DNA from: Pecten maximus | Taxonomy: Eukaryota | NCBI RefSeq assembly: GCF_902652985.1 | Contig: NC_047023.1 | Location: forward strand, 35,898,001-35,962,000 | DNA length: 64,000 bases | Direction: 5' to 3' | Shown here: positions 30,901 through 60,960 of the stretch, piece by piece | Numbering within the stretch: position 1 is the stretch's first letter | Layout: every line of letters begins with the position of its first letter | Translations under genes and position numbers: made by a program | The notes under the pieces: generated by a model | Told to the model about the DNA's origin: nothing | Seen by the model: the letters and a program-made list of their open reading frames with translations, nothing else | Databases searched by the model: none

Positions 30901-33900
30901 CCCAATATGGGAAATTGAGGCAATACCTTCAACTCGCTACTAGTCATAAAGTTATGAATGGATTTGAACCCAATTTGGTCAGAACATACATGCCATATCT
31001 CCCTTATTTTCAAGTCCTTTATTTCCTCCCGGGAGGAGAGCCCAAATTCCCGTATTTGTAATTCCCTCCGGTATTTTTACCGACACCAATTTTGTTTACA
31101 ATTCAGTAGTTTTTCTCGCGAGATTTAATGAGATTTGGCTAAATTTAGCGATCACATGATCCATCTGTTCATGTGATCACTCAATCAAAATGGCACCTGT
31201 TGGACACAGCTTTCACACGAAGCTCTGGCTAGTGTAATGTTTGCGCTAGAATATCTATCACCATGAAATAACTTTAACCCTCTTTGCTAACAGACTTGAA
31301 TTATTTTTGTTTTCTTTTAGGACCATACTTTGATGAAGGTAATTGATACAGAGCCTGGTCAGACGCAAAATCACACGTGTTTTTCATATAACATGTGTAT
31401 CGTTGATCAGTGATAGCAAGATGAAATCCGATATTTTCTTTTAGAAAACTATCAAAATTAACACATCTGTTGGTCGTAGTGGTCAATTATGATGTTTACA
31501 ATGACTGTACCGTCCATGACAGAGATAATATACAAAATCTAGAATGATCGTATCATCGTGATAAGATTTACTGCAGTCTCCTAACATGAACATCTTCAGT
31601 TCTCATGACTTCATGTATACACTTGCACACTTGGAATATTTTTATATCTAAATGGTCCAACATAAGGGATCCCACAGGACATTTCATGGTGATTTTTATA
31701 ACTGATGTGTACCCTCAGAGTGGATCAAGCTTTCTAATTTTAAGAAAATCCAAACTGATCAATGATTAATTTGCTTGTCTTGATCTTTAGCTACATGTAA
31801 TTATAATATACCCTTTTCAAATGCTGTTATGTAATATGCATAAAGCTGTGAAACTTTTTGTGTTACATAAAAAAATAAAAAAATAATTTCATATCATCAG
31901 AATCTGAATGTATACTTATTGCAATTTTTACCTTATACAACTTTTTGTTGTTTGCATATACAATATGATTAATATCCAAAATAAAGATAAATATTCTTTT
32001 TCACTTTCAAAATTAGTTCATTGCTTTAAAATTGAGTAAAAATGTTGATATTCATGTCTCGCACAAATCTCCCTTATTTTAGGCAAAACTCCCTTAAAAT
32101 AATCATTAATCTCCCTTATTGGTCTCCTGAAAATATGGCATGTATGTCAGGAACATCCTTGGCAGAAGGGGATCAGATTTTGCATAAATGGTGACTCTGA
32201 CCCCCGAGGGGCCAAAGGGGCGGTGCCCAATAGGGGAAATAGAGGTAATTCCTTTAAATTGCTACTTGTCAGAAACATCTTGGGGGAAGTGAAACAGATT
32301 TTGCATTAATGATGACTTTGATCCCCAAGGGGCCAAATGGGCAGGGCCCCATAGGGAAATAAACGTAATTCATTTAAATTGCTACTAGTCATAAAGTGAT
32401 GAATGCATGTTCTAAAAAAAATTCTTGAGGTCTTTCAGACCCTTTAGAGAGTCTGGACTTTGTTATTTCTTTAAAGCAGTTGGGATCCACATACTATAAC
32501 TATATATAGCATTGTTTGAGATTGACAAATAAAACGAATTGAACATGAACATTATTTTGACATTTGGTCTAATCTAACCAGGTGAGCGATACAGGCCCCA
32601 TGGGCCTCTTGTTTTTAATGTTTATCCAATTTTAAAATTTTATAGAAAAAAAAACGAATAAAAAGACTGCTTAAAAAGTGCCATTTAATTTTATTCTGTC
32701 ATACCCAAACGGAAACTTTTACTGGATAATTCATTTCTTTAAACAAATGAGTACTGATATTCCAAATATTCTTCAGAGGAATTCACAATTATTAGAGGAT
32801 TAAGACAAAGACTTGTGGCATACTGTATTGAACTAATTATAAGACCCTTATTTTAATGATATTGTTTTTGTCAAAATGCCGTCAAGAAAGTGCCAGCTTT
32901 AAGTTTTACAATTTTCCTCTCTCTCTCTTTTATTTTGCTTCTAATATGTACTAATAAAAGATTGTTTGAATTGCAACAGATCGCCTGATTGGTCAGCCAG
33001 AGTTCAGAGCCCGTGGTCACATGAAGCCTCAAGAGGTGACAGCCTTGTCGGGATATTATGTAGAGGACGTAGTGTGTGGAGCTGAACACACTCTGGCGTT
33101 AACTTGTACTGGAGATGTGTGGGCCTGGGGTAACAACAGTGAGGGCCAACTAGGGATAGGTCATACCAACACACCTGTCCGCGAACCACAACTGGTACCC
33201 TGTCTCACGGGCAAAAACGTCAAACAGGTAGGTTATCTACAACTGGTACCCTGTCTCACAGGCAATATCGTCAAACAGGTAGGTTATCTACAACTGGTAC
33301 CCTGTCTCACTGGCAATATCGTCAAACAGGTAGGTTATCTACAACTGGTACCCTGTCTCACTGGCAATATCGTCAAACAGGTACGTCATCTAAATCTACA
33401 GCTGGTACCCTGTCTCACAGGCAATATCGTCAAACAGGTAGGTTATCTACAACTGGTACCCTGTCTCACAGGCAATATCGTTAAACAGGTACGTCATCTA
33501 CAACTGGTACCCTGTCTCACTGGCAATATCGTCAAACAGGTAGGTCATCTACAACTGGTACCCTGTCTCACAGGCAATATCGTCAAACAGGTAGGTTATC
33601 TACAACTGGTACCCTGTCTCACAGGCAATATCGTCAAACAGGTAGGTTATCTACAACTGGTACCCTGTCTCACGGGCAATATCGTCAAACAGGTACATGA
33701 TCTAGAGCTACAACTGGTACCCTGTCTCACAGGCAATATCGTCAAACAGGTAGGTTATCTACAACTGGTACCCTGTCTCACGGGCAATATCGTCAAACAG
33801 GTACGTCATCTAAATCTACAACTGGTACCCTGTCTCACAGGCAATATCGTCAAACAGGTAGGTTATCTACAACTGGTACCCTGTCTCACAGGCAATATCG

Positions 33901-36900
33901 TCAAACAGGTAGGTTATCTACAACTGGTACCCTGTCTCACGGGCAATATCGTCAAACAGGTACATGATCTAGAGCTACAACTGGTACCCTGTCTCACAGG
34001 CAATATCGTCAAACAGGTAGGTTATCTACAACTGGTACCCTGTCTCACGGGCAATATCGTCAAACAGGTACGTCATCTAAATCTACAGCTGGTACCCTGT
34101 CTCACAGGCAATATCGTCAAACAGGTAGGTTATCTACAACTGGTACCCTGTCTCACTGGCAATATCGTCAAACAGGTACGTCATCTAAATCTACAGCTGG
34201 TACCCTGTCTCACAGGCAATATCGTCAAACAGGTAGGTTATCTACAACTGGTACCCTGTCTCACAGGCAATATCGTCAAACAGGTAGGTTATCTACAACT
34301 GGTACCCTGTCTCACGGGCAATATCGTCAAACAGGTAGGTTATCTACAACTGGTACCCTGTCTCACAGGCAATATCGTCAAACAGGTACGTCATCTACAA
34401 CTGGTACCCTGTCTCACGGGCAAAAACGTCAAACAGGTACGTCATCTACAACTGGTACCCTGTCTCACGGGCAAAAACGTCAAACAGGTACGTCATCTAG
34501 AGCTACTACTGGTACCCTGTCTCACTGGCAAAAACGTCAAACAGGTACGTTATCTACCACTGGTACCCTGTCTCACGGGCAAAAACGTCAAACAGATACA
34601 TGATCTAGAACTATAACTGGTACAAAAAAATTCGTCAGAGAAATCGTCAGCATTCGAAAGCTAAATTAACCAATACTCCTGCCTCTTGGAACAAATTTAG
34701 AACTATTCGGAACGAAGTGATTTCTTCTATCCGAGAGGCAAAAGAAAAATACCTTTCTAAACTCCAATCATCCTTAGTTAATAAGTCTATTCCGCCCGGT
34801 AAATGGTGGCGTATTGCCAAATCAGTTATGAATCTAAAAAACAAAAATGAAACAGATGCCCCTTTGGTTATAAACGGAGAGTTAAAATTTCACCCTATTG
34901 ACAAAGCTGAATCTTTCAACGACTATTTTACGTCTATATCTGTTTCCAATAAGAATGCTGACGATTTACCACCTGATTGTCCTCAACCTCAACAGACCTT
35001 CTCTACTATCAATATTACCGAACAAGACATTATAGATCAGTTACGTCTTCTCAACGCAAGTAAACCTGTAGGTCCGGATACTATTCCCCCTAAATTTATT
35101 AAAGGTATTTCTAATTCGCTTATTAAACCACTGCATGTAATATTTAACAAGTCTATTTCTACTGGTGTTCTTCCGACTGTATGGAAACATTCTAATGTCA
35201 CTCCAATTTATAAAGGCAAAGGTTTACGATCTGATCCATCGAATTTTCGACCAATCTCTGTTACTCCTATTTTTAGTAAAATATTAGAAAAAATTGTCTT
35301 CAAGTACATGTTTAATTTTCTATCGGAGAATAATATCATTTCCAGAAATCAATCGGGGTTTTTACCTAAAGATTCAACTACTTTTCAACTATTGAATATA
35401 TATGACACAATTGTAAAACATTTGGATAAGGGTAAAGAGGCAAGAATGGTTTTCTGCGATATAAGTAAAGCTTTTGACCGAGTTTGGCATGATGGTCTAA
35501 TATATAAATTGAAAAAATATGGTATCGGCAGAAATATGATTAAGTGGTTTTCATCTTATTTAAACGGTAGGATGCAGAGAGTGGTCGTCGATGGATTCAG
35601 ATCTTCTTGGAAAACCATTCAGGCAGGTGTGCCCCAAGGTTCCGTGTTGGGTCCTTATCTATTTTTATTATTATATAAATGATATATGTGAAAATTTAAC
35701 TTCAGATTTGAAACTGTTTGCTGATGACACATCTTTATATACACTTATAGAGGGAGACCGACAGGAATCTGCAAATATTTTAAATTCTGATCTCAGGAAA
35801 ATTTCCTCATGGGCAGACGCCTGGGGAATTGTTTTTAATCCAGAAAAAACAGTAGCTCTTCTTTTTTCAAGTCGGGTTGACTCCCAGACTTTACATCCTG
35901 ATCTGGTCTTTAATAACCTTACTATCAAAAATGTAACAAATCACAAACATCTTGGTCTCTTCTATAATTCTATGGCTAACTGGTCGACTCATATCAATTT
36001 TATTTATGAAAAAGCATATAAAAGGATAAATATACTCAGGATGTTGAAATACAAAATCGATAGAAGGTCTCTTACAACTATCTATACTTCTTTTATTCGG
36101 CCTATCCTAGAATATGCTAGTATTGTGTGGTCTAACTGTACCCAGGCAGAATGTAACCTCTTGGAGTCAATTCAACTTGATGCAATACGTATAATTACTG
36201 GCTTAAGAAAAGGAACTAGTCATTCAGTATTATATTATGAAACTGGTATTGTACCTCTCATTGCTAGAAGACATCTACATCAAAATATTACTTTTTATAA
36301 TATTTTTAACAATAACTGTCCGCATCATATCACTGACTTACTACGACCTTTTATTAACACCAATGATGTCTATAATTTTCGCCATGCTAGATTGTTTAAT
36401 ATTCCTGCCTTGAGAACTCAGCTATACAGCAATAGTTTTTTTCCGTCCTTGATGTCTGAATGGAACAGTCCGTCCTGTCCGTTTCCCTCTATGTCTTCCG
36501 TACGTGAAATAAAAAAGGAATGCTTACAAGCTGGTATTACAGATAATTTCCCACTGTGTTCTGAAACATTTAAATATTCTGGCGAAAGAAAAATCAATAT
36601 TATAATATGTCAGTTAAGAAATTCCGCTAGTAATCTAAACTCTGATTTATTTTATTCTCACTTATGTGATAGTCCTGCCTGCCGGTGTGGTTTTCCGATT
36701 GAAGATTCCTATCACTATTTTCTTTATTATCCTCTCTATACTAATCAAAGAATTCGCCTAAGTAACTCCATTGCTGTATTAGATGTTAACATTCCTCTTT
36801 CTATCGAAACTTTCCTCTATGGATATAATAGTCATGTTTTTAATTCAAATGATATGTTATTGAAGATCGTACAGGAATACATTAGAGATACCAAACGCTT

Positions 36901-39900
36901 TATATAAGATATTAATAACTAATTATAATTAATTGAGTTGATTTTAGATTTATTAATTAAGATGTGAAAAATTATTAATCTAAGAGGCATTTTGACATGT
37001 CTAACATACGCTTCATGATTTATTTATATTCAACTTGCGAGACTCTCCGAAATTGTCTGTTTAATCACTATTATCTTTGCTTTACTACATATATTTTCTA
37101 GTTGTGTATTTTATGTATTGTACTGTTATCAATGTAATTATCGGGAGAGGGCTAATATAGGCATTGCCTGTTGCCCATTTCCCTTTGAATTAACATCTTC
37201 AATAAAATATTCTGAAATGAAATGAAACTGGTACACTATCTCACCAGCAAAAACATCAAACAGGTACTTTATCCAATATATCACAACTGGTGCCATGTCT
37301 AATCTACAAAAAATGTCAAACAGGTATGTTATCTGCCAGAGACTTACAAATTGTGGCCTTATAATGTTTCAGAAAAGCAAGCATAAAGCATTTTAGCCTT
37401 CATACAAAAAAACCCTCTAACTGATGGGGTCCAGATCAGTAAATTTAGATTTACAGTCTTGGTATTGGATGATTTGACTTGAGTTCTTGATAAGGACATT
37501 TGAGTGTACATTGTACTTTCAGCGGTTGAAAGCTATTTAAATCCTTTTGTTACATTTTTTTTTTTGACAGACCATTAATATAAAAATACATAATGTAGTC
37601 AAGTATTTCTGACATTCTTCACAAGGTTATTCGGCGGTTGCTAGGGAAAAGATAAATCGATCTTACACAGGGTGGGTAAAGACAGCCGGCATGCGCTATA
37701 TGACGCTGCTCACAATAATGTAACATCATCATTTTACGTTGAGTAACCAAGTCGTAAATGATGACGTCATTAATTTTGACGCACATTCCAAGGAGCAATG
37801 AAGATGGCGTGATGAAAAACTTTCATAAAAACTTATGTTTGGTTGCAAGTATGTGAGAAAAATAATCAATCATGGGTCTGTTCCGCAAACAAGGATATCA
37901 ACCCTCGTGTAAGAGTTTGGCTGGCCAGCACTCGGCAAGCCTCGTGCTGACTGGCCAAACTCTTACGCTCGGGTAGAGATATCCCTGTCCACGGAACAGA
38001 CCCATGATAGATTCTATTAATCAACTTGGTTGTATTCATTTCCATGGCTCCATGAATGTTCCATGGAAAATTTTCTGATAAATTGTTAAAGCTACTATCA
38101 AATGAAGTTGGAAGTTGAAATTGGAGTCTGATGATGACTGGTGCACACAAGCCATTAAGTCGTGATTGTTGTATTATTAATAAAAGAGCAAAATATTTTT
38201 GTTACATTCAAAATAGAATGTGAATTCTCTCTCAGATATCAGCTGGTAGGACACACAGTGCCTCGTGGACAGCCCAGCCTCCTCCCCAGAGGAAACCAGG
38301 TGTGCCCCTCCCACTACAGCTAGGCATCCCAGAGTGTGTGCCACCTCAGTACACAGCCTTGACTGGAGTCAGCCTGGAGGACATACAGGGGAGATTCAAG
38401 CTCCTCCATCACTTCTCTGACCTTATATACTCCTCCTGGCGACTACTTCCACTTACTTGTACACAGGTGCGTATCTATAAGCAAAATCTGCTTACATTAA
38501 ACAAAATATCTTATGAGATGTTATTACTCTTTGAAAACTTTTTATCTGTCACTTTCACCAAAACAGAAGGATATTAAATTGGGTTTGTCCAGCTGTCTGT
38601 CCATCTGTCTGTCCCACTTTGTTTCCATGTAATAACTGCATCAAATGTTGACAGATTTTCTTCAAACTTGGTAACACGATTTGAAACTTGAAGGGCTCGT
38701 CCAAGTTGAATTGCCACTTCACTTTTGTTGGACTTTATTTGAGGGGATTATAGCTCCTTCATTAAATAAAAATGTTGTTTTTTGCCATTTCTCTGAAATA
38801 ACTGAAACAATTGTTAACAGATATTCTTCAAACTTGATAACAAGATTAAATGCCTTAAGGGCTCATTTGACTAAGTTATGGCCCCTTAAGGGAGTTTGAT
38901 TGCCGAATATTATTTTGTAGAGTTATGTCCCCTTGATTAATTAAAAATTTTGATTTCTGCTGTTTCCATGCAACTCCCACAGATATTATCTGATTATCAT
39001 CAAACTTAGTAACAGAATTATCATTCCTTGATTTATGAAAATCATTACTTACTTGCCGTTAGGTAACTCTCAAATATTTTTTGAAAGTCTTGCAAAATCT
39101 ATTTTACTTAATCCTGTTAAACATGTTCAATAAAACATCTGACTTCTGTATATTAGGCTTTGCTTTTTTGTTCAAGTTTCAAGCAATACATTATGGCTGA
39201 AAAGAATTCATCATTCTGTCAAGTTATAATGATATGTTTAGTCCTAACTTCACAAATGTTACCCTACAGTATGTCAGAAAAGCGAATTCGCTTGTTATTC
39301 TGAATATACTGTCGGTGATCAAGCATCTTAAAGAAAGTCTGCAGGACAACATACAATGTAATACATTGTAGTTATACACTGTCAGGTACCTGGGAAATAG
39401 ATGTGGATAGCATTATACTTTACAAACTCATCTGACACCTGATTTAACTTATAACTTAGCGTGGTGGATGTACTTCTTAATCTCTAAATGGATTGAATTG
39501 ATCTATCAGTATAAATCTGTAAAGTCAGTATAAATCTGTAAAGTCAGTATAAATCTGTAAAGTCAGTATAAATCTGTAAAGTCAGTATAAATCTGTAAAG
39601 TATCATTTCTTACAATCACCAGGTTCTGTATGTTACAAAATATATTGGGACTACCACTTAAAAGCAGCCAAGCAAAAGGCTTGTTATCAAAAGACCAAGG
39701 TGAAATTATATACTCAGGTATGAGGACTGTATTTTTATTTTTATCAATAAGAATATCAGTATTTGCGTCCACAGTCTGCCCTTACTCGCTATGAGGCTGG
39801 AATGATTGGAATCATTGATGGAAGATTGCGCCCACTCCTGTCTCCCAGGGTCTACACACTGCCCCTTGTCAGGGCCATAGGCAAGACCATGGTACAAGGC

Positions 39901-42900
39901 AAAAACTACGGCCCACAGATCACAGTCAAACGCCTGTCTACCAGGTATTAAGAACTCTTTCCACTTCATAGTCTTAAGCCTCTTTTAAAAATATTTAATT
40001 AAATAAGGCAGAGTCGTGATTACTTTAAAAGATTAAATCTATATGTCATAAGATAGTTTACAACATTTTTGACATAAGTGAACTTACATCAGAATTCATT
40101 ATACAATTTATGTTAATTTCTCTATTTAGGGGTAAGAAATGTAAGAGAACTTACATCAGAATTCATTACACAATTTGTATTAATTTCTCTATTTAGGGGT
40201 AAGAAATGTAAGCCGGTGTTCTCCCAGATTGCCCAGCAGGTTGTCAAACTGAAGGCAGAAGACTTAAGACTACCTGCTCGGGCCTGGAAGGTAAAACTGA
40301 TAGGAGAAGGAGCAGATGATGCTGGAGGTGTTTTTGACGATACCATTACAGAGATGTGTCAAGTAAGTAGACTTGTGTTTTAATCCTTGGTTTTTATCCT
40401 AGATTGTATCTGGGAAATTTATCCTGGTCTTAATTTAAAGGATATCTCATCGTTTGTTTGGATCCTCCTGTTTTTAGTGTTATGATACATGAGCTTTGTT
40501 TTTAGAAGATTTTTATATATTAATGCTTTCTTTGATAGGAGTTAGAGATGGGAGTAGTCCCGGTATTAATAACAACTCCAAATGCTCAGAACGACTCTGG
40601 AAACAATAGAGATAGGTAAGTATTACATGTACTTACATTAGTACAAGACTTAAGATTCACCAGTATCTACAAATACCAACTCACTATACTTTCCATTATC
40701 AATTCACTATGTCAGTATACATTGTACATAGTGTTAATACACTGTATAGGTACAAGTAGTTTTTTATTATCATTTGTCCTCCATCAAGGTTGTTGTTGAA
40801 CCCGTCACTGACTTCGGAGGAGGACCTGGCACTGTTTAAGTTCCTTGGTATCCTGTTTGGAGTGGCTATCAGGACAAAAAAGCCCCTGGACCTGCACTTG
40901 GCACCATGTGTCTGGAAGTTATTAGTCGGCATTCCACTGAAACATGAGGACCTGGAGGAGGTAAGTATTTACCTGTCAACATCCTCCATCAAACATGAGA
41001 ACCTAGAGGAGGTAAATGTGTTAATGGTCAATATCCTCCACTCAAACACAAAAACCAAGGGGAGGTAAGTAAGTTACTGTTCAACATTCTCCACTCAAAC
41101 ACGAGAACCAAGGGGAGGTAAGTAAGTTACTGGTCAATATCCTCCACTCAAACACGAGAACCAAGGGGAGGTAAGTAAGTTACTGGTCAACATCCTCCAC
41201 TCAAACACGAGAACCAAGGGGAGGTAAGTATTTACCTGCCAATATCCTCCATCAAACACGAGGACCAAGGGGAGGTAAGTAAGTTACTGGTCAATATCCT
41301 CCACTCAAACAAGAGAACCAAGGGGAGGTAAGTAAGTTACTGGTCAATATCCTCCACTCAAACACAAGAATTAAGCCGAGGTAAGTATATTGCTGGTCAA
41401 TATCATCCATCAAACATGAGAACCAAGGAGAGGTAAGTAAGTTACTGGTCAATATCCTCCACTCAAACACAAGAACCAAGGGGAGGTAAGTAAGTTACTG
41501 GTCAATATCCTCCATCAAACACGAGAACCAAGGGGAGGTAAGTATGTTACTGGTCAACATCCTCCACTCAAACACGAGAACCAAGGGGAGGTAAGTAAGT
41601 TACTGGTCAATATCCTCCACTCAAACACGAGGACCAAGGGGAGGTAAGTAAGTTACTGGTCAATATCCTCCATCAAACATGAGGACCAAGGGGAGGTAAG
41701 TATGTTACTGGTCAACATCCTCCACTCAAACACAAGGACCTGGAGGGTTTAGGTCAGCATCAGTCAACATTCCTCTAACATAGCGGGATCTTTATAATTA
41801 TTAACATCCTCCGCTCCTAAGCTTTAACCTAAAGACAGATGGTTGGTGTCCCAATCAAAGTTCTTTACTTAGTCTCCATTTTTAACTAAGGAAACTATTT
41901 ATAATAAGATATAACTATGTGTATAGAGACTGTTTATCTTAGATGTACTGTGTGTCCTCATTATAGATAGGGACATGACGTAATTGTATATTTACATTGT
42001 ATATTTTCTCTGTTTACAGAATATATTTACATGAAGATCTTTTGTATGAAGAGATTACATGAAATTATTGTGTGTTCACAGGTAGACCATCTATATATAC
42101 AGAGCCTGATTGGTATATCTGACATACAGAAGAGTGGAGTCAATGAGACAAACTTCCATGAGGTACACACTACTGTTTACATGACATTGACATTTACCAT
42201 GGTGGCATGTAATACTGAACTTTTTATCCTTTGTCATCTATCATCTGAGCCGAGTTGTTCAAAAGATGATTAGGCTAATAATAGTTTAACAACTATTTTC
42301 AAATCATGATCAAATGGATTCTGGTAACATTAACCTGACAAAAGTTATGGAACTTCTAAATATCTCTACAACTTGTCATTTTTAACGAAGATGTACTCAC
42401 AAATTTTGTAAGAAATAGAATCAAATATTTCACTAATCAAGTAATTAAGTTAACCATCTTTTGAACAACTTGGCCCTGTTGATTTAGCATGTAAATAATC
42501 AGATACTAGTTGCACATGGTGCATAGTTAACTGTAAAATTCCTTTTGCCTTTAAAACTTTAAATTTGAATATATGTCTTCCTCATTTTATTCGTAATTCG
42601 TCTGAACTTTAAATCTCTCTCTCAGATGGCTGTTAAAGTCCCATAGGGCACTTGTTAGCCAGTGAGCTTATGCCATGACATCAGTCATACAGCATCCATT
42701 AACATTTCCTTTAAATCATTACTAGTCCTGAACACCTGAATGGATTTTGATTACCTGAAGGTAAACTTAGTCTGGAGCATTATTTAGCAAATGAGATCTA
42801 ATGTTGTAAATGAAGGATGTGGCTCCCTGGGGTCCAATAGGGAAAATTGAGGTAAACCATTTAAAATGCTACTAGTCCTGAAGGACTGAATGAATATTGA

Positions 42901-45900
42901 TGAAGTTTGTTTGTGAGCATTATTGGACAAAGGAGATCTAATGTATAAACAGGGGGTGTGGAGGTTACCAGAATATCCAGGTGAGTGATGCAGGTTCTCT
43001 GGGCCTCCTGTATATTAATGTTGCCAGTAGAGTCAATATTTAGATATAATTAAATAGAAACCTGACAATGTGTTCTCAGTCAGGCCAACACTACAAAATT
43101 ACTGATGAGTGTGAGATTTTACCTAATTACCCCTAGCAAATACATGTATTTGTAGAATAGCGATGACTTAATTCCGTTTACAATTTTCCACAGTTCATTC
43201 CACTGGACAGTTTTCTGGGACAGAGTTCAGATGGTCGTCTAATTCCAGTGATCCCAGGTGGGAGTACAATTCGTCTCCACTTTCACAACAGACGAGACTA
43301 TGTTGAGGCCGTCCTTAACTACCGACTCCACGAGATGGATCAACAGGTGAGCTGTCTCCTTTAGGAAATAAAATGGTGTTATATAAAAATGGATTGAAGC
43401 CCAGATCTGATTTATTACCAATTCTTCCATTATCGAGAAGAAAATAAAAGACAAAAAAAACATCAAGGCAAAACCATAAGAAACTAGACATATGCAGAAA
43501 TAACACATAACTTTTTACTGCCAGCTTTTGTACTTAATATCCCACTAACCCTGTGAACCATTTTATTTCATAGCTGATGTATCACTATATCAACAAGAGG
43601 CCCATGGGCCTTAGCGGTCACCTGAATTTTGATATATTTTAGTATATTTGGCCCCTGTGCCCTTGAATGAAGGTCAAGGTCATCCACTTGAACAAACTTG
43701 GTAGCCCTTCATCCTAGCATGCTACAGACCCAATATCAGGTCTCTGGGCCTGTTGGTAATTGAGAAGAAGTTTAAAATGTAAATTGTTTACGACGGACAA
43801 TGGATGACACACGACGCCGGACAAAAGGCGATCGCAATAGGTCAACTGCGACTTTGTCTCAGGTGACCTAAAAATGTTGACATAGTTTGTTGTTATTTGT
43901 ATATTCAGAGCATATATCAGTAGTAAGCTTTTATTCAACACTCAGGTGAAGTTTAGGTTTAGATTGAGTTATGTGCATTGTGTGGCAAGAAACTCAAGTA
44001 TCTATGAATGTAACCCTAGTAACTATGAATGTAACCCTAGTAACTACAAATGTAACCCTAGTAACTACATATGTAACCCTAGTAACTACAAATGTAACCC
44101 TAGTAACTACAAATGTAACCATAGTAACTACATATGTAACCCTAGTAACTACAAATGTAACCATAGTAACTAAGAATGTAACCCTAGTAACTACAAATGT
44201 AACCCTAGTAACTACATATGTAACCCTAGTAACTACAAATGTAACCATAGTAACTACAAATGTAATCCTAGTAACTACAAATGTAACCCTAGTAACTACA
44301 AATGTAACCATAGTAACTACAAATGTAACCATAGTAACTACATATGTAACCCTAGTAACTACAAATGTAACCCTAGTAACTACAAATGTAACCCTAGTAA
44401 CTACAAATGTAACCCTAGTAACTACATATGTAACCCTAGTAACTACAAATGTAACCCTAGTAACTACAAATGTAATCCTAGTAACTACAAATGTAACCAT
44501 AGTAACTACAAATGTAACCATAGTAACTACAAATGTAACCATAGTAACTACAAATGTAACCATAGTAACTACATATGTAACCCTAGTAACTAGGAATGTA
44601 ACCCTAGTAACTAAGAATGTAACCCTAGTAACTATGAATGTAACCCTAGTAACTACATATGTAACCCTAGTAACTATGAATGTAACCCTAGTAACTACAA
44701 ATGTAACCCTATTAACTACAAATGTAACCCTAGTAACTACATGTTACCCTAGTAACTACAAATGTAACCCTATTAACTACAAATGTAACCCTAGTAACTA
44801 TGAATGTAATGTTGGAACAATAGGATTAACACTTTAATGTAACCATAGTAACTAAAATCTGATTGCTTACCTACAGGCAGCAGCAGTGAGGGAGGGCATG
44901 GCGTGGATCGTACCTGTGCCCTTGCTGACATTGCTCTCCCCACGGGCCCTGGAAACGATGGTTTGTGGAATGGAGGACATGAATGTGGACATCCTCCGTA
45001 AAGTCGTCAGGTAGGCCAGAATTATGTCTTTATCAGATTACAATTTCACACTTAAAATAACACAGGTTCACTGTGAAAGGCAATGTCAGATTTTATTGGA
45101 GTACATGGGTACAAGATATGTTATCACTGCAACTGGGTACAAGATATGATATCATGGCAGCTGGGTACAAGATGTGTTATCATGGCAGCTGGGTACAAGA
45201 TATGTTATCATGGTAACTGGGTACAAGATGTGTTATCATGGTAACTGGATACAAGATGTGTTATCATGGTAACTGGGTACAAGATGTGTTATCATGGTAA
45301 CTTGGTACAAGATGTGTTATCATGGTAACTGGATACAAGATGTGTTATCATGGTAACTGGGTACAAGATGCGTTATCATGGTAACTGGATACAAGATGTG
45401 TTATCATGGTAACTGGATACAAGATGTGATGTCATGGTAACTGGGTACAAGATACGGTATGTTATCTTGGTTACTGGGAACAAGACATGTTATCACTGCA
45501 ACTGGGTACAAGATAAGTTACCATGGCAACTGGGTACAAAATATGTTATTAAGGCATCTGGGTGCACTATATATATCATCACAGTAACTGGGTACACGAT
45601 GTATAATCATGGCCACTGTCAGGGTTTAGTTCTCCATTCAGACGACACCTGCCAGATCAAGTGAATTTCCTGTTTAGGTCAACAAGTATGATTAATTCAG
45701 TACACAATCACAAAACTTTAATGAATGTTGTGAAAGAAATGAAGTTTATTGAATTGCCAGATGTGTACAATGTAAAACATTACCTTTTATCAACATCCCC
45801 CTAACCCTCTCCTCACTCACCCACAGACAACTCCATCATATGTAGAATATACAGTGTGGTACCTTCTACAATTATTTTGAATATGCTTTTGGAATTCTAT

Positions 45901-47505
45901 AATACAATACAGGTGACTCTCCTCTACCAACAGAAGTATGCTTGCTGATTTATAAACAACCCTGTATATATCCTGAAGGTTGTTAGCCAGCAGTAGAAAT
46001 GTGGTACTATCAAACATTGTGTTGCTGTAACCAGCAGTATAAATGTATTGTGTCACTGTAGCCAGCAGTATAAACGTTATACTATCAGACATTGTGTCGC
46101 TGTAACCAGCAGTATAAACGTGGTACTATCAAACATTGTGTCGCTGTAGCCAGCAGTATAAATGTAGTACTATCTAACATTGTGTCACTGTAGCCAGCAG
46201 TATAAACGTGGTACTATCTAACATTGTGTCGCTGTAACCAGCAGTATAAATGTATTGTCGCTGTAGCCAGCAGTATAAACATAGTACTATCTAACATTGT
46301 GTCACTGTAACCAGCAGTATAAATGTAGTACTATCTAACATTGTGTCACTGTAACCAGCAGTATAAATGTATTGTCGCTGTAGCCAGCAGTATAAACATA
46401 GTACTATCTAACATTGTGTCACTGTAACCAGCAGTATAAATGTAGTACATGTACTATCAAACATTGTGTCACTGTAACCAGCAGTATAAACGTAGTACTA
46501 TCAAACATTGTGTCACTGTAACCAGCAGTATAAACGTAGTACTATCAAACATTGTGTGGCTGTAGCCAGCAGTATAAACGTAGTACTATCAAACATTGTG
46601 TCACTGTAACCAGCAGTATAAACATGGTACTATCAAACATTGTGTCGCTGTACGTAGCCAGCAGTATAAACGTTATACTATCAGACATTGTGTCGCTGTA
46701 CGTAGCCAGCAGTATAAACGTTATACTATCAGACATTGTGTCGCTGTAACCAGCAGTATAAACATGGTACTAACAAACATTGTGTCGCTGTAGCCAGCAG
46801 TATAAATGTGGTATTATCAAACATTGTGTCGCTGTAGCAATATAAGCATGACACTATCAAACATTGTGTCGCTGTAATAGCTGATTTTGTGTTTCACAGA
46901 TACCGAGGTATAGACGAAAAGAGTGAAGTGGTACGCTGGTTATGGGAAGTGCTGGAGTCTTTCAGCAATGATGAACGGATCCAATTCCTGCGTTTTGTGT
47001 CAGGGAGGACACGATTGCCAGCAAATCCCTCAGATATATCACAGCGATTCCAGATCATGAACTCTGATAGGGTTAGTCTCTATGAATTATATTTAGTTAA
47101 AAAAAAATAACAATTTACAGTATTACTTTGTGTGTTTGTATTTACACTCAACATTGTGAGGGCTTGTGTAGGCTGTCAGTTTTCTAATCTCTGTTGTAGT
47201 ATAGCTCTTTGTTATGAAATATTCAGATATTCAAATAAACTCTTATTAGATGTTAACTGATTAAAGATATGTTAAATTTCCATTTCTTTCTTTTTTCTCA
47301 ATTTTAGGGAGTGGATTGTCTGCCTACATCACAGACATGTTTCTTCCAACTTCGCCTTCCATCTTATCCTAGTCGTGAGGTTCTAAGTGAAAAGTTACGA
47401 TATGCCATATACAATTGCCGGTCAATTGATATGGACAACTATATGCTAGCAAGAAATGTGGAGAATGATGTGCCATCTGACGATGAAGGAATGGAATACA
47501 TGTAA
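792..47505 (+). CDS. HERC1: HERC1-like E3 ubiquitin ligase, 3' part (36 exons; the 5' part lies upstream of the window)
   Basis: Spliced translation follows the HERC1 domain order and motifs as I recall them: LATWMLEHP (UBA end), VCELC...HPGCG, LGEQA...[11 protein letters not shown]40 ([23 protein letters not shown]), RCC1 repeats ([26 protein letters not shown]) and HECT ([38 protein letters not shown]). Exon phases checked by hand are all compatible, apart from +1 A at 29866-29872. Confidence 0.95.
2040..2490 (+). mobile_element. Degraded mariner transposase fragment (boundaries approximate)
   Basis: [20 protein letters not shown] motif; a downstream frame gives [19 protein letters not shown], typical of the mariner C-terminus. 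Confidence 0.85.
2543..2703 (+). CDS. HERC1: HERC1 exon
   Basis: tttcag|, G|gtacgt; phase 2 to 1 fits neighbours. Confidence 0.7.
3374..3600 (+). CDS. HERC1: HERC1 exon (acidic linker)
   Basis: ttacag|, ATA|gtaagt; phases fit. Confidence 0.75.
4327..4429 (+). CDS. HERC1: HERC1 exon (VVCELC...HPGCG)
   Basis: ttacag|, A|gtgagt; conserved Cys/His motif. Confidence 0.85.
4441..8985. repeat. Intronic satellite, 42-bp unit (45- and 29-bp variants), interrupted by a MITE
   Basis: Unit aaccaaccatagtctagctagtacaaactctacttaacactg; starts about 12 bp after the exon donor at 4429. Confidence 0.97.
5820..7024. mobile_element. Non-autonomous DNA transposon (1.2 kb), 14-bp TIR, 6-bp TSD
   Basis: catacatgccatac...gtatggcatgtatg; AGCTTG on both sides; second copy at 30985-32146. 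Confidence 0.9.
9416..9661 (+). CDS. HERC1: HERC1 exon ([15 protein letters not shown])
   Basis: tatcag|, G|gtatat; matches the HERC1 CGSG.PYYLLC.TCR motif. Confidence 0.8.
10191..10367 (+). CDS. HERC1: HERC1 exon
   Basis: caatag|, T|gtatgt; donor chosen by phase; encodes [12 protein letters not shown]. Confidence 0.7.
10666..10840 (+). CDS. HERC1: HERC1 exon (LGEQA...[12 protein letters not shown])
   Basis: taacag|, AG|gtaagt. Confidence 0.85.
10789..11248 (+). repeat. 57-bp tandem array of exon end plus splice donor (~8 copies)
   Basis: Unit ...cacgcagtattgtaatgaaagctctgtctgtcctggctagtag|gtaagt; the first copy is the exon end. Confidence 0.95.
11558..11774 (+). CDS. HERC1: HERC1 exon ([17 protein letters not shown])
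   Basis: ttacag|, CAG|gtgaga. Confidence 0.85.
11935..13186 (+). mobile_element. Putative Crypton-like non-autonomous element with long terminal hairpin (left boundary approximate)
   Basis: ORF remnant 12430-12681 ([15 protein letters not shown]...KRRR..YDSDSE) resembles C-termini of DUF3504/Crypton-type proteins; hairpin with ~65-bp arms at 13042-13180. Confidence 0.5.
13385..13583 (+). CDS. HERC1: HERC1 exon ([11 protein letters not shown])
   Basis: ttttag|, T|gtaaat. Confidence 0.75.
14323..14967. repeat. 34-bp tandem repeat, ~19 copies
   Basis: ataaagctaaaatacggtcatggataaccagttt. Confidence 0.97.
16226..16565 (+). CDS. HERC1: HERC1 exon (start of WD40 region)
   Basis: tttcag|, AG|gtaaga; [27 protein letters not shown]. 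Confidence 0.9.
16625..17282 (+). repeat. 58-bp tandem array of splice acceptor plus exon start (~10-11 copies)
   Basis: Unit tgtttgttttgtcag|tggctatgatgccacactacgtctttggagtctgtattatata; the last copy is the exon start. Confidence 0.95.
17252..17454 (+). CDS. HERC1: HERC1 exon (WD40)
   Basis: tgtcag|, G|gtaagt; [10 protein letters not shown]. Confidence 0.85.
18174..18377 (+). CDS. HERC1: HERC1 exon (WD40)
   Basis: acacag|, G|gtaagt; [18 protein letters not shown]. Confidence 0.85.
18619..18743 (+). CDS. HERC1: HERC1 exon (WD40)
   Basis: cttcag|, CAG|gtagaa; [10 protein letters not shown]. Confidence 0.85.
18888..19090 (+). CDS. HERC1: HERC1 exon (WD40)
   Basis: ctccag|, AG|gtaata; [13 protein letters not shown]. 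Confidence 0.85.
19061..19435 (+). repeat. 50-bp tandem array of exon end plus donor (~7.5 copies)
   Basis: gggagactaaacacctgttgttgtcaag|gtaatgtaggtcagttatata. Confidence 0.95.
19529..19634 (+). CDS. HERC1: HERC1 exon (WD40)
   Basis: ttgcag|, GAA|gttagt; [15 protein letters not shown]. Confidence 0.75.
19964..20122 (+). CDS. HERC1: HERC1 exon (WD40)
   Basis: atacag|, TCT|gtgagt; LQGH...[11 protein letters not shown]. Confidence 0.8.
20726..20824 (+). CDS. HERC1: HERC1 exon (WD40)
   Basis: ctacag|, AAG|gtcaga; DGCLLQT. Confidence 0.8.
21245..21418 (+). CDS. HERC1: HERC1 exon
   Basis: tggcag|, AAG|gtactc; GLNQAPCL...QYLYEK. Confidence 0.85.
21805..22217 (+). repeat. 40-bp tandem array of acceptor plus exon start (~10 copies)
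   Basis: agatacatttctgtaatttatttcag|ccaatcatggtct. Confidence 0.95.
22206..22341 (+). CDS. HERC1: HERC1 exon
   Basis: tttcag|, G|gtaagg; [17 protein letters not shown]. Confidence 0.85.
22812..22960 (+). CDS. HERC1: HERC1 exon
   Basis: ttccag|, ATG|gtaaca; [18 protein letters not shown]...FPDSF. Confidence 0.8.
23541..23732 (+). CDS. HERC1: HERC1 exon (start of second RCC1-like domain)
   Basis: ttacag|, AAG|gtaact; [23 protein letters not shown]. Confidence 0.9.
23882..24034. mobile_element. Short palindromic MITE-like element
   Basis: acaggatttcagacaaatta / taatttgtctgaaatcctgt inverted pair with imperfect outer arms. Confidence 0.5.
25134..25272 (+). CDS. HERC1: HERC1 exon (RCC1 repeat)
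   Basis: tttcag|, G|gttagt; [25 protein letters not shown]. Confidence 0.9.
26154..26335 (+). CDS. HERC1: HERC1 exon (RCC1 repeat)
   Basis: ttccag|, CAG|gtaagc; [29 protein letters not shown]. Confidence 0.92.
26510..26890 (+). mobile_element. Degraded element with terminal imperfect hairpin (boundaries approximate)
   Basis: aatatggtgttatact / agtataacaccatatt inverted pair at about 26766-26860. Confidence 0.4.
27272..27427 (+). CDS. HERC1: HERC1 exon (RCC1 repeat)
   Basis: ttgtag|, TAT|gtaagt; [17 protein letters not shown]. Confidence 0.9.
29713..29939 (+). CDS. HERC1: HERC1 exon (RCC1 repeat; +1 A in assembly; GC donor)
   Basis: atacag|; VACGLNHTL...IKK, then the shifted frame reads [22 protein letters not shown]; G|gcaagt donor. 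Confidence 0.85.
30710..32613 (-). mobile_element. Helentron/HINE-like non-autonomous element with nested MITE
   Basis: Terminal palindrome agctcacc...ggtgagct, (GTCC)n microsatellite, internal repeats, other end caggtgagc...ggccc/gggcctcttgtt in a T-run. Confidence 0.75.
30985..32146. mobile_element. Second copy of the 1.2-kb CATACATGCC-TIR element
   Basis: catacatgccatat...atatggcatgtatg; TSD TCAGAA/TCAGGA; colinear with 5820-7024. Confidence 0.9.
32980..33227 (+). CDS. HERC1: HERC1 exon (RCC1 repeat)
   Basis: caacag|, CAG|gtaggt; [31 protein letters not shown]. Confidence 0.9.
33189..34624 (+). repeat. 51/57-bp in-frame tandem array of exon end plus donor (27 copies; 2 more degenerate copies at 37226-37335)
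   Basis: caactggtaccctgtctcacaggcaatatcgtcaaacag|gtaggttatcta; gives the 531-aa read-through ORF. Confidence 0.97.
34625..37225 (+). mobile_element. 5'-truncated LINE (CR1/L2-group-like) reverse transcriptase, one frameshift
   Basis: RT motifs [41 protein letters not shown]; C-terminal CxC..E..H motif; aataaa plus (TGAAA)3 tail; 10-bp TSD AACTGGTACA (34615-34624 and 37226-37235). Confidence 0.93.
37600..38020 (+). mobile_element. Non-autonomous element with long terminal hairpin (Crypton-like, tentative; left boundary approximate)
   Basis: Hairpin 37869-38008: atcatgggtctgttccg...cggaacagacccatgat and gtaagagtttggc...gccaaactcttac. Confidence 0.5.
38236..38466 (+). CDS. HERC1: HERC1 exon
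   Basis: tctcag|, CAG|gtgcgt; [25 protein letters not shown]. Confidence 0.9.
39506..39600. repeat. 19-bp tandem repeat, 5 copies
   Basis: tcagtataaatctgtaaag. Confidence 0.95.
39775..39944 (+). CDS. HERC1: HERC1 exon
   Basis: ccacag|, AG|gtatta; [13 protein letters not shown]...[12 protein letters not shown]. Confidence 0.9.
40080..40212 (+). repeat. 67-bp two-copy duplication of acceptor plus exon start
   Basis: gaacttacatcagaattcatta...taatttctctatttag|gggtaagaaatgtaag twice; AGs end at 40129 and 40196. Confidence 0.95.
40197..40362 (+). CDS. HERC1: HERC1 exon (start of HECT)
   Basis: atttag|, CAA|gtaagt; [26 protein letters not shown]. Confidence 0.92.
40539..40615 (+). CDS. HERC1: HERC1 exon (HECT)
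   Basis: tgatag|, AG|gtaagt; [15 protein letters not shown]...NRDR. Confidence 0.88.
40789..40960 (+). CDS. HERC1: HERC1 exon (HECT)
   Basis: atcaag|, GAG|gtaagt; [24 protein letters not shown]. Confidence 0.9.
40930..41747 (+). repeat. 51-53-bp tandem array of exon end plus donor (~15 copies)
   Basis: cctccactcaaacacgagaaccaaggggag|gtaagtaagttactggtcaatat, derived from cattccactgaaacatgaggacctggaggag|gtaagt. Confidence 0.93.
42082..42162 (+). CDS. HERC1: HERC1 exon (HECT)
   Basis: tcacag|, GAG|gtacac; VDHLYIQSL...NFHE. Confidence 0.85.
42249..42476. mobile_element. Small MITE with imperfect TIRs
   Basis: gccgagttgttcaaaagatg ... catctttttgaacaacttggc. Confidence 0.55.
43194..43346 (+). 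CDS. HERC1: HERC1 exon (HECT)
   Basis: ccacag|, CAG|gtgagc; [13 protein letters not shown]...YRLHEMD. Confidence 0.9.
43592..43872 (+). mobile_element. Short Helentron/HINE-like element
   Basis: aacaagaggcccatgggcc start, GGAC-type microsatellite remnant, terminal palindrome taggtca...tgaccta before an A-run. Confidence 0.7.
44001..44855. repeat. 21-bp tandem repeat, ~39 copies
   Basis: tgtaaccctagtaactacaaa; ends about 20 bp before the acceptor at 44876. Confidence 0.97.
44877..45010 (+). CDS. HERC1: HERC1 exon (HECT)
   Basis: ctacag|, AG|gtaggc; [15 protein letters not shown]...LETMVCG. Confidence 0.9.
45105..45610. repeat. 28-bp tandem repeat, ~17 copies
   Basis: ggtacaagatgtgttatcatggtaactg. 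Confidence 0.93.
45985..46877. repeat. ~44-bp tandem repeat, ~21 copies
   Basis: ccagcagtataaacgtagtactatcaaacattgtgtcgctgtag; ends 22 bp before the acceptor at 46899. Confidence 0.95.
46900..47071 (+). CDS. HERC1: HERC1 exon (HECT C-lobe)
   Basis: tcacag|, AGG|gttagt; [28 protein letters not shown]. Confidence 0.92.
47308..47505 (+). CDS. HERC1: HERC1 terminal coding exon (catalytic Cys)
   Basis: ttttag|; [16 protein letters not shown]...[11 protein letters not shown]; TAA stop. Confidence 0.92.
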   Translation, partial: GVDCLPTSQTCFFQLRLPSYPSREVLSEKLRYAIYNCRSIDMDNYMLARNVENDVPSDDEGMEYM

Positions 47506-59313: not shown

Positions 59314-60960
59314 AACAAGAGATCCCAGAGGGATCTTGGCGCCCACCATTGAATGATCTTCATAGGTTCCATGTCAGATTGATCTTTTCTCTACTTTTCC
59401 CTTCATTTTACTAATCTGTGCAAATTGAGACATCCCTCCAGTACTTTTCAAACAAGGGAATCCTAGCTATATAAGAAATTTGAGATTTAACGATAATGGC
59501 TGTTTGTTTGCCAGGTTGTTTTCAGGACAGACTGGTCCAAAAACGCAATACAAGGGACCAAGGGGAACCTACTTATGAAATTTGAGAAAGATCCATTCAG
59601 TACTTTGAGAAATAGAGATAACAAACTTCAATTGTTAAAATCCAAGATGGCGGTCTGTCGGCCATGTTGTTTTCTGATTGGTCTCAAAACGCAATATGCA
59701 TAACTAGGCACCAAGGGCAACCTACATATGAAATTTCAGAAAGATCCATTCAGTACTTTCTCAGAAATAGTGATAACAAACTTAAATTGTCAAAATCCAT
59801 GATGGCTGCCTGTCGGCCATGTTGTTATCCGATTGGTCTCAAAACGCAATATGCATAACTAGGCACCAAGGGAAACTTACATATGCAATTTGAGAAAGAT
59901 CCATTCAGTACATTCTCAGAAATAGCGATAACAAACTTCAATTGTCAAAATCCAAGATGGCTGCCTGTCGGCCATGTTGTTTTCGGATTGGTCTCAAAAC
60001 GCAATATGCATAACTAGGCACCAAGGGAAACCTACAAATGAAATTTCAGAAAGATCCATTCAGTACTTTCTCAGAAATAGTGGTAACAAACTTCAATTGT
60101 CAAAATCCAAGATGGCTGCCTGTCGGCCATGTTGTTTTCCGATTGGTCTCAAATCGCAATATGCATAACTAGGCACCAAGGGGAACCTACATATGAAATT
60201 TCAGAAAGATCCCTTCAGTACTTTCTCAGAAATAGCGATAACAAACTTCAATTGTCAAAATCCAAGATGGCTGCCTGTCGGCCATGTTGTTATCCGATTG
60301 GTCTCAAAACGCAATATGCATAACTAGGCACCAAGGGGAACCTTCATATTAAATTTGAGAAAGATCCCTTCAGTACTTTCTCAGAAATAGCGATAACAAA
60401 CTTCAATTGTCAAAATCCAAGATGTCTGCCTGTCGGCCATTTTGTTTTCGGATTGGTCTCAAATCGCAATATGCATAACTAGGCACCAAGGGGAACCTAC
60501 ATATGAAATTTCAGAAAGATCCCTTCAGTACTTTCTCAGAAATTACGATAACAAACTTCAATTGTCAAAATCCAAGATGGCTGCCTGTCGGCCATGTTGT
60601 TATCCGATTGGTCTCAAAACGCAATATGCATAACTAGGCACCAAGGGGAACCTTCATATTAAATTTGAGAAAGATCCCTTCAGTACTTTCTCAGAAATAG
60701 CGATAACAAACTTCAATTGTCAAAATCCAAGATGGCAGCCTGTCGGCCATTTTGTTTTCCGATTGGTCTCAAAACGCAATATGCATAACAAGGCAGCAAG
60801 GGGAACCTACATATGAAATTTGAGAAAGATCCCTTCAGTACTTTCTGAGAAATAGCGATAACAAGAATTGTTTACGGACGGAGGGACGGACGGACGACGG
60901 ACGACGGACCACGGACGCAGGGCGATTTGAACAGCCCACCATCTGATGATGGTGGGCTAA
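59314..60960 (+). mobile_element. Helentron/HINE-like element with internal 155-bp tandem array (~8.5 copies)
   Basis: aacaagagatccc..ggatcttg start, 155-bp period (tccaagatggc at 59641, 59951, 60106...), (GGAC)n, terminal palindrome agcccaccat..atggtgggct, A-run. Confidence 0.85.

What the first reader, a model, noticed from the sequence alone, without database searches (positions are those of the whole stretch)
33189..34616. 27-copy, fully in-frame, stop-free donor array: a possible variable-length protein insert
Seen: every unit is 51 or 57 bp (19 and 7 units after the first copy), there is no stop for 1.4 kb, and 26 copies end in CAG|gta in the same phase as the real donor. Splicing from any of them to 38236 would keep the frame and add n copies of [17 protein letters not shown]-like peptide (up to about 440 aa) within the last RCC1 blade, with HECT intact. 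Many decoys are identical to the true CAG|gtaggt. Unlike the other arrays, mis-splicing here would escape NMD. Whether the open frame is selected or a chance property of the founding unit is unknown.
Basis: partly seen in the sequence, partly recalled or inferred. Interest (0 to 1): 0.8.

Follow-up and report, generated by a model that had tools for sequence, protein, structure and literature searches.

The report
In-frame splice-donor minisatellite in scallop HERC1
A HERC1 intron in the king scallop starts with 27 tandem copies of the exon end plus its splice donor; they keep the reading frame, but the mRNA contigs examined use only the first donor, so it looks like a neutral repeat of a known kind.

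Summary
At 33188-34623 lie 27 tandem units, with spacings of 51 nt (19 times) and 57 nt (7 times). They carry 26 phase-0 CAG|GT donors: the real one plus 25 decoys, 14 of them identical to the real 9-mer. The exon's frame stays open to a TAA at 34614-34616.

The gene is the HERC1 orthologue of Pecten maximus (assembly size and scaffold count match exactly). The exon is the last-but-one piece of RLD2, and HECT exons follow downstream.

The functional reading is not supported:
- Spliced contigs from 4 runs in 3 studies show a single joint, 33227|38236.
- No contig lies on the array in any run, and no decoy joint appears.
- Changes between units fit neutrality: 8 synonymous, 17 non-synonymous and 1 stop, against about 29/67/4 % expected.
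- Periods and length variants of 61 neighbouring arrays are not biased to multiples of 3.
- Only 1 of 7 candidate donor-seeded arrays in or just upstream of this gene is open in frame, about the chance rate.

This is a junction-spanning minisatellite of a known kind: amphioxus "mirages", and the human F7, IFI6, CBS, LMNB2 and PDGF arrays. Rare or tissue-specific decoy use and copy-number variation remain untested.

The scan's first readers noted similar donor arrays on other DNA of this genome, at least three of them described as in-frame and stop-free.

The parts
32980..33227 (+). HERC1 coding exon (RLD2, penultimate piece); codons run from 32982 and the last codon is CAG at 33225-33227
   Evidence: RNA contigs cover 32978-33224(+3) without a break. 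It aligns to human HERC1 RLD2 4o2w residues 311-391, domain E 1.5e-28. Pfam RCC1 8.7e-17.
33228..33229 (+). Authentic 5' splice site GT (CAG|GTAGGT), intron phase 0
   Evidence: Joint 33224->38233 'cut +3', GT..AG ends, in all 4 runs.
33188..34623 (+). Junction-spanning minisatellite: 27 units of 51 or 57 nt plus a 6-nt partial unit. Unit 1 is the exon's last 40 nt plus the first 11-16 nt of the intron.
   Evidence: The unit-type string is ABCDBEFBBGBHBBGBIBDBBJKLMNO, with 11 identical B units and a duplicated 5-unit block (units 8-12 and 13-17).
33279..34546 (+). Span holding the 25 GT-bearing decoy donors, all in phase 0: 14 CAG|GTAGGT, 9 CAG|GTACGT, 2 CAG|GTACAT
   Evidence: None is joined to 38236 in any contig.
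34593..34601 (+). Degenerate donor of unit 27 (CAG|ATACAT; the GT is lost)
34614..34616 (+). First in-frame stop (TAA, a CAA>TAA change in the last unit)
34650..37222 (+). 5'-truncated non-LTR retroelement in the same intron; reverse-transcriptase ORFs at 34717-35682 and 35591-36907
   Evidence: Pfam RVT_1 6.7e-24. Repeat-derived contigs end near 37222. The element's boundaries are approximate.
38236..38466 (+). Next HERC1 exon (77 codons, phase 0 to 0), the acceptor used by the first donor
   Evidence: Contigs cover 38233(+3)-38466; sequence. Two other-species ORFs start at the same point, which suggests a conserved intron position.
40760..47502 (+). Downstream HECT-domain exons, ending at the stop after 47502
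   Evidence: Pfam HECT matches cover profile positions 28-302 over five ORF pieces. ORF list.

Best explanation
This is a young, neutral or nearly neutral intronic minisatellite. A segment of 51 or 57 bp spanning the 5' splice junction of a HERC1 exon was duplicated in tandem. It then expanded by slippage or unequal exchange. The middle of the array was homogenised and the edge units decayed. The spliceosome uses only the first, upstream-most donor, so all later copies are removed with the 5-kb intron and are not translated. The fit to the reading frame is a by-product of four things: a phase-0 donor, a founder unit whose length is divisible by 3 and which has no stop, one 6-nt length variant, and too little time for stops to accumulate. 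Shown here: the anatomy, the exclusive first-donor joint in assembled RNA, the neutral substitution pattern and the local base rates. Inferred: the mode of origin, and the reason the first donor wins (5'-to-3' first-come choice or exon definition, as shown experimentally for human F7).
For: 1. RNA. In 4 runs from 3 studies, one long spliced contig per run (4277, 7572, 4978 and 426 nt) joins 33227 to 38236 with GT..AG ends. Depth is zero over 33382-34545 and there is no other joint involving the array. Decoy products would carry no premature stop, so their absence cannot be put down to NMD.
2. Direction. The exon end is ancestral: it aligns residue by residue to human HERC1 up to ...GKNV(K/R)Q. 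The exon therefore seeded the array, not the reverse.
3. No coding constraint. A minimum spanning tree of the 15 unit types gives 8 synonymous, 17 non-synonymous and 1 stop change. Neutral expectation is 29/67/4 %. The one stop expected did occur, in unit 27.
4. Founder effect. Frame +1 is also nearly open, with 4 stops from 2 events.
5. Base rates. The 61 arrays in 264 kb have period mod 3 of 22/22/17. Of 44 non-modal unit-length classes in 26 arrays, 12 (27 %) differ from the mode by a multiple of 3. Among 7 candidate donor-seeded arrays in or just upstream of this gene, periods are 57, 41, 45, 57, 50, 51 and 53. Four are divisible by 3 and only this one is open.
6. Typical minisatellite turnover. 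There are 11 identical B units and a duplicated 267-bp five-unit block. The ancestral AAAAAC variant survives only in unit 1 and units 24-27.
7. Precedent. Junction-spanning minisatellites whose downstream donors stay silent are documented for human F7, LMNB2 and PDGF and for amphioxus mirages.
Against: The RNA evidence is assembled contigs, which drop rare variants and carry no tissue information. An isoform of a few percent, or one confined to an unsampled tissue or stage, would be missed. Three of the four runs are RNA only by inference from their spliced contigs. In human IFI6 and CBS the two most proximal pseudo-donors are used, so silence is not universal. Fourteen decoys are identical to the true 9-mer, so nothing in the donor itself forbids their use. 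Copy number and frame in other individuals were not tested. The neutrality test rests on about 26 inferred events, several at one recombining site, so its power is low.
Confidence: 0.8

Rival explanations
1. The array is a source of HERC1 isoforms. One or a few proximal decoys are used at low level, or in particular tissues or conditions. This would insert 17n residues just before the last strands of RLD2, as in human IFI6, where two downstream repeat donors give extra mRNAs.
For: All 25 GT decoys are in phase and stop-free, and 14 are identical to the true donor. Their products would escape NMD. IFI6 and CBS show that proximal pseudo-donors can be used. Contigs cannot exclude rare forms.
Against: No decoy joint appears in 4 runs from 3 studies, at word depths of 26-36 in three of them. 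There is no sign of purifying selection on the would-be peptide. The insert would fall inside the closing blade of a beta-propeller, which is inference from the alignment. In IFI6 the decoys used lie very close to the true site (a 12-nt unit, from my own knowledge); here the nearest is 51 nt away.
Confidence: 0.12
2. The array acts in cis on RNA processing. A cluster of 25 U1-binding sites behind the exon would strengthen exon definition, or suppress premature cleavage and polyadenylation in an intron that carries a retroelement.
For: Many intact strong donors are retained. A sense-strand retroelement lies directly downstream. HERC1 alone has several such arrays.
Against: Nothing tested here supports it. 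Retention of donors is expected in a young array, and the edge units are already decaying, with GT lost in unit 27. Arrays of unrelated sequence cover 23.5 % of the sampled region, which argues for a mutational process rather than function.
Confidence: 0.05
3. The array's size or internal order is an assembly artefact of the long-read assembly. The true allele would have fewer copies or a different arrangement.
For: No DNA reads were laid on the array. RNA contigs do not cover it. No second haplotype copy exists in the assembly.
Against: The graded structure is what real minisatellites show: diverged edge units, a homogenised core and multi-unit blocks. Dozens of similar arrays lie nearby. The published assembly was polished and curated. 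Even a wrong copy number would not change the reading.
Confidence: 0.04

Closest known systems
Human F7 intron 7 minisatellite (37-bp VNTR; Borensztajn et al. 2006, PMC1557585)
   Same: The first unit spans the exon-intron boundary, so the authentic donor is followed by identical pseudo-donors. Only the most upstream site is used.
   Different: F7 has 5-9 units of 37 bp, which is not a multiple of 3, so most pseudo-sites shift the frame. Here there are 27 units of 51 or 57 bp, all in frame. In F7 the pseudo-sites were shown to be functional by mutagenesis; here nothing was tested experimentally. F7 is a vertebrate gene and this is a bivalve gene.
Human IFI6 (6-16) exon 2 / intron 2 minisatellite (Turri, Cuin and Porter 1995, as summarised in PMC1557585 and PMC4526556)
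   Same: The authentic donor is followed by 25 pseudo-donors. This is the same number of GT decoys as here.
   Different: In IFI6 the two most proximal repeat donors are used constitutively and give three mRNAs. Here no decoy use was seen. The IFI6 unit is 12 nt (my own knowledge, not checked here); the unit here is 51 or 57 nt.
Amphioxus 'mirages' (Adh3, TnC, globin Gb6/Gb9, PGBD5; PMC3087553, PMC3902484)
   Same: [quoted passage not shown] Several occur per gene or genome. Regular splicing is not disturbed. Cores are homogenised and boundary units excluded.
   Different: They were described in cephalochordates. In my searches of the held library I found no description for bivalves. Length or somatic instability is shown for Adh3 and globin but was not tested here.
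Human CBS intron 13, LMNB2 and PDGF junction minisatellites (listed in PMC1557585)
   Same: Repeats of 15-20, 10-15 and 16-18 units that reiterate the donor. In LMNB2 and PDGF only the authentic donor is used.
   Different: CBS uses two pseudo-sites. The paper's introduction says the mechanism that prevents pseudo-site use was not investigated in those genes.

Membership tests
Junction-spanning ('mirage'-type) minisatellite | Head-to-tail array with a minisatellite-size unit (about 10-160 bp) | tested here: met
   27 units of 51 or 57 bp, 89 % matches.
Junction-spanning ('mirage'-type) minisatellite | The first unit contains an authentic exon-intron boundary, so the splice signal is reiterated in the intron | tested here: met
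   The array starts at 33188, inside the exon. The donor used in RNA, at 33227|33228, lies in unit 1. 25 further GT donors follow.
Junction-spanning ('mirage'-type) minisatellite | Regular splicing is kept: the authentic site is the one used | tested here: met
   A single joint, 33227->38236, in 4 runs from 3 studies. This is contig-level evidence, so rare forms are not excluded.
Junction-spanning ('mirage'-type) minisatellite | Length polymorphism or instability between alleles | not tested
No second haplotype is present in the assembly.
IFI6-type multi-donor minisatellite that yields protein isoforms | Reiterated donors keep the reading frame | tested here: met
   All donors are in phase 0, units are divisible by 3, and there is no stop before 34614.
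IFI6-type multi-donor minisatellite that yields protein isoforms | Downstream repeat donors are used in mature mRNA | tested here: not met
   No decoy joint or contig in 4 runs. The result is inconclusive for rare or tissue-specific forms.
HERC1 orthologue (host gene) | A C-terminal RCC1-like domain most similar to HERC1 RLD2, followed by a HECT domain | tested here: met
   The best PDB match is HERC1 4o2w, 1.4e-63 overall, ahead of HERC2 and UVR8. HECT profile positions 28-302 are covered downstream. The rest of the gene was not modelled.

The most novel reading that the evidence does not exclude
The array could be an IFI6-like isoform generator in a conserved giant E3 ligase. Proximal decoys would be used at low level or in particular tissues, giving NMD-immune HERC1 forms with +17n residues at the RLD2 closure. 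Copy-number alleles would then set the range of possible inserts. A separate use holds even if the decoys are silent: this locus and the other in-frame arrays noted in the genome would be natural, NMD-free reporters of 5' splice-site choice in a mollusc.
Probability: 0.1. Interest if true: 0.55.

Novelty: new member of a known kind. Interest (0 to 1): 0.3.

Why it matters
On its own this locus is an ordinary example of a known class, with no sign of function. It has two modest points of value. First, every decoy product would be in frame and so invisible to NMD. The exclusive first-donor joint is therefore a cleaner natural readout of the rule that the most upstream identical donor wins than out-of-frame arrays can give, and it extends that rule from mammals to a bivalve. 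Second, it belongs to a strikingly dense population of minisatellites in Pecten maximus: 23.5 % of 264 kb sampled, and seven candidate donor-seeded arrays in or just upstream of one gene. That resembles the amphioxus 'mirage' phenomenon, and I found no description of it for molluscs. The genome-wide pattern, not this array's open frame, is what deserves follow-up.

Tried and rejected
- Word search with the next exon. The aim was to find short public ORFs joining an inner unit to 38236. It returned only two ORFs from other species, so it says nothing about scallop isoforms.
- PDB search with the next exon: no match. Only about 11 residues would overlap the HERC1 RLD2 construct.
- Own-genome search with the exon plus the array start: only the locus itself. 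There is no haplotig or paralogue to compare frames with.
- Pfam on the hypothetical array peptide: seven weak hits, none with a stretch that passes on its own. I read these as repeat artefacts and rejected them.
- RNA folding of 33150-33400: z = -1.8. Donors pair with neighbouring units, but the true donor and the decoys behave alike, so structure does not explain the choice.
- Recursive splicing at the CAG|GT sites: considered and rejected by reading the sequence, because no pyrimidine tract precedes the CAG.
- Satellite-first origin (the exon end captured from a repeat): rejected, because the exon end aligns to human HERC1.
I re-ran it by coordinates.
- The large representative-protein search was not used, because the protein's identity was not in doubt.
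- The fetch from genomes returned 10 kb rather than 20 kb per stretch, so the regional sample is 200 kb plus the window.
Full report
**Observation**

The sequence between 33188 and 34623 is a head-to-tail array.
- A 16-nt anchor occurs 27 times.
- The exon's frame has codons from 32982 and the real donor follows the CAG at 33225-33227. In that frame there is no stop until the TAA at 34614-34616.
- All 27 exon-like ends are in phase 0. The donors are 15 CAG|GTAGGT (the real one plus 14 decoys), 9 CAG|GTACGT, 2 CAG|GTACAT, and one degenerate CAG|ATACAT in the last unit.
- Use of a GT decoy would add 17 to 439 residues.
- The next exon is 38236-38466, phase 0 to 0.

**Host gene and organism**

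The exon 32980-33227 aligns over its whole length to human HERC1 RLD2, chain 4o2w, residues 311-391 of 404. This is the best of all PDB matches. It also matches the Pfam RCC1 repeat.

Five downstream ORF pieces between 40760 and 47502 cover HECT profile positions 28-302.

The window is G000:C9:35898001-35962000 of an assembly of 918,306,378 bases in 3,983 contigs. These are exactly the figures published for Pecten maximus xPecMax1.1. The animal is the king scallop.

Because the exon end is conserved with human HERC1, the exon seeded the array and not the reverse.

**Is any decoy used?**

I laid Logan contigs of four runs from three studies on 32800-38600. One run is on record as RNA-seq. The others are shown to be RNA by their spliced contigs.
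- Each run has one long contig (4277, 7572, 4978 and 426 nt) that runs through the exon without a break. It then jumps from 33224(+3) to 38233(+3) with GT..AG ends.
- Word depth is zero over 33382-34545 in all four runs.
- The only other joint listed lies in a repeat at 37882-37971.
- No contig fits two places of the stretch.

So the dominant mRNA uses the first donor only. Decoy products would have no premature stop, so NMD cannot explain their absence.

The limit is that contigs drop rare variants and carry no tissue label. A minor isoform cannot be excluded.

**Selected or chance?**

(a) There are fifteen unit types. A minimum spanning tree between them gives 26 substitutions: 8 synonymous, 17 non-synonymous and 1 stop. 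All single changes of the consensus units would give 29 %, 67 % and 3-4 %. The one expected stop did occur, in unit 27. By contrast, three of the four exonic differences seen in the RNA contigs are synonymous. That is a very small sample.

(b) A second frame is nearly open too, with four stops from two events. Openness is therefore largely a property of the founder unit. A phase-0 donor reads GTA GGT and imposes no stop.

(c) I took 20 stretches of 10 kb upstream on the same contig and ran TRF on them together with the window.
- 61 arrays cover 23.5 % of 264 kb.
- Their periods fall 22/22/17 into the three classes mod 3.
- In 26 arrays with at least 10 copies, 44 non-modal unit-length classes occur. 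Twelve of them (27 %) differ from the mode by a multiple of 3.
- One +6 length variant in this array is therefore unremarkable. An array of period 31 shows the same +6 step.

(d) Seven arrays on the gene's strand, in or just upstream of the window, repeat an open frame's end plus a donor-like site. The exon status of the three upstream ones and of 10787 and 19061 rests on ORF reading only. Their periods are:
- 57 (L023:6852)
- 41 (L024:4613)
- 45 (L025:3337)
- 57 (10787)
- 50 (19061)
- 51/57 (this array)
- 53 (40933)

Four periods are divisible by 3, and only this array is open in its exon's frame. One in seven is about what simple probability gives for a donor of any phase. That estimate is one third for the period times roughly 0.5 for the absence of a stop.

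**Structure of the array**

Eleven units are identical (type B). Units 8-12 and 13-17 form a duplicated five-unit block of 267 bp. The AAAAAC variant of the true exon survives only in unit 1 and units 24-27, while units 2-23 carry AATATC. The last units are the most diverged, and the last one has lost its GT.

This is the usual picture of unequal exchange: a homogenised core and decaying edges. The same pattern was described for amphioxus globin mirages.

A 5-nt match (ACAAC) at the exon-side start and at the end of each unit could have mediated the first duplication. The 57/51 difference sits between two ATCTA copies 6 nt apart. Both points are inference from reading the sequence.

**Mechanism**

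The best reading has three parts:
- A junction-spanning tandem duplication is harmless as long as the outermost donor is chosen, so it can drift and expand.
- The spliceosome commits to the first donor it meets behind the exon.
- The rest of the array leaves with the intron.

The choice of the first site is shown here at contig level. Its cause is inferred from the human F7 work. There, identical pseudo-donors are functional but never compete with the most upstream one, even when they would keep the frame. RNA folding gives no difference between the true site and the decoys.

**Comparison with what is known**

The class is established:
- Human F7 intron 7 (37 bp): only the first site is used.
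- Human LMNB2 and PDGF: only the authentic site is used.
- Human CBS and IFI6: two proximal pseudo-sites are used. IFI6 has 25 pseudo-sites and three mRNAs.
- Amphioxus mirages in Adh3, TnC, globin and PGBD5: splicing is undisturbed.

This array meets the tested defining features of a junction-spanning minisatellite. It fails the one feature that would make it IFI6-like, namely decoy use. I found no paper describing such arrays in bivalves. That is only a search of the held library.

**Earlier notes of the scan**

First readers recorded many donor-seeded arrays in this genome. At least three more were described as in-frame and stop-free. I did not verify those. They fit the base-rate argument.

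**Verdict**

- The functional interpretation is not supported by the RNA available, and the open frame is explained by chance.
- This is a new member of a known kind.
- Interest is low to moderate. It lies mainly in the locus as a natural NMD-free reporter of donor choice, and as one instance of an unusually dense, mirage-like minisatellite landscape in a mollusc.

Noticed in passing
window 1-64000 plus L006-L025 (G000:C9:35.50-35.89 Mb): Minisatellites (period 15 or more, at least 4 copies) cover 62,095 of 264,000 bases (23.5 %) in 61 arrays, about one per 4.3 kb. The published repeat table for this genome lists simple repeats at only 0.99 %.
   Followed up: partly
L023:6852-8424; L024:4613-9334; L025:3337-3871; window 10787-11245, 19061-19434, 40933-41740: Six further arrays on the HERC1 strand repeat an open frame's end plus a donor-like site (periods 57, 41, 45, 57, 50, 53). 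L023 repeats an RCC1 motif end (…WGEGDYGRLG|GT) 28 times, and 40933 follows a HECT exon. This looks like many more junction arrays than random placement would give; I made only a rough mental estimate and no formal test.
   Followed up: partly
window 16724-17235: A 58-bp array whose unit reads as an intron end (pyrimidine run plus CAG) followed by a WD40-like exon start (…[10 protein letters not shown]…). It appears to be an acceptor-side counterpart of the donor arrays.
   Followed up: no
window 37456-38037: An intronic repeat with very high word depth in RNA contigs (over 3000 in X1 and X2, against about 36 for the HERC1 exons) and many loose ends. It is probably a highly expressed dispersed element such as a SINE.
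   Followed up: no
window 34650-37222: A 5'-truncated non-LTR retroelement (RVT_1) on the sense strand directly behind the array. Its reverse-transcriptase reading frame is split between two overlapping ORFs. Related copies are transcribed.
   Followed up: partly
window 38377: All four RNA runs read A where the assembly has G (GAG to AAG, E to K) in the exon after the array. The reference animal carries a minority allele, or this is a polishing error.
   Followed up: no
window 59553-60864; L008:7170-7995; L025:3988-4991: A 155-bp tandem repeat family recurs at several places in the region, in both orientations. It is a dispersed satellite or an element-borne array.
   Followed up: no
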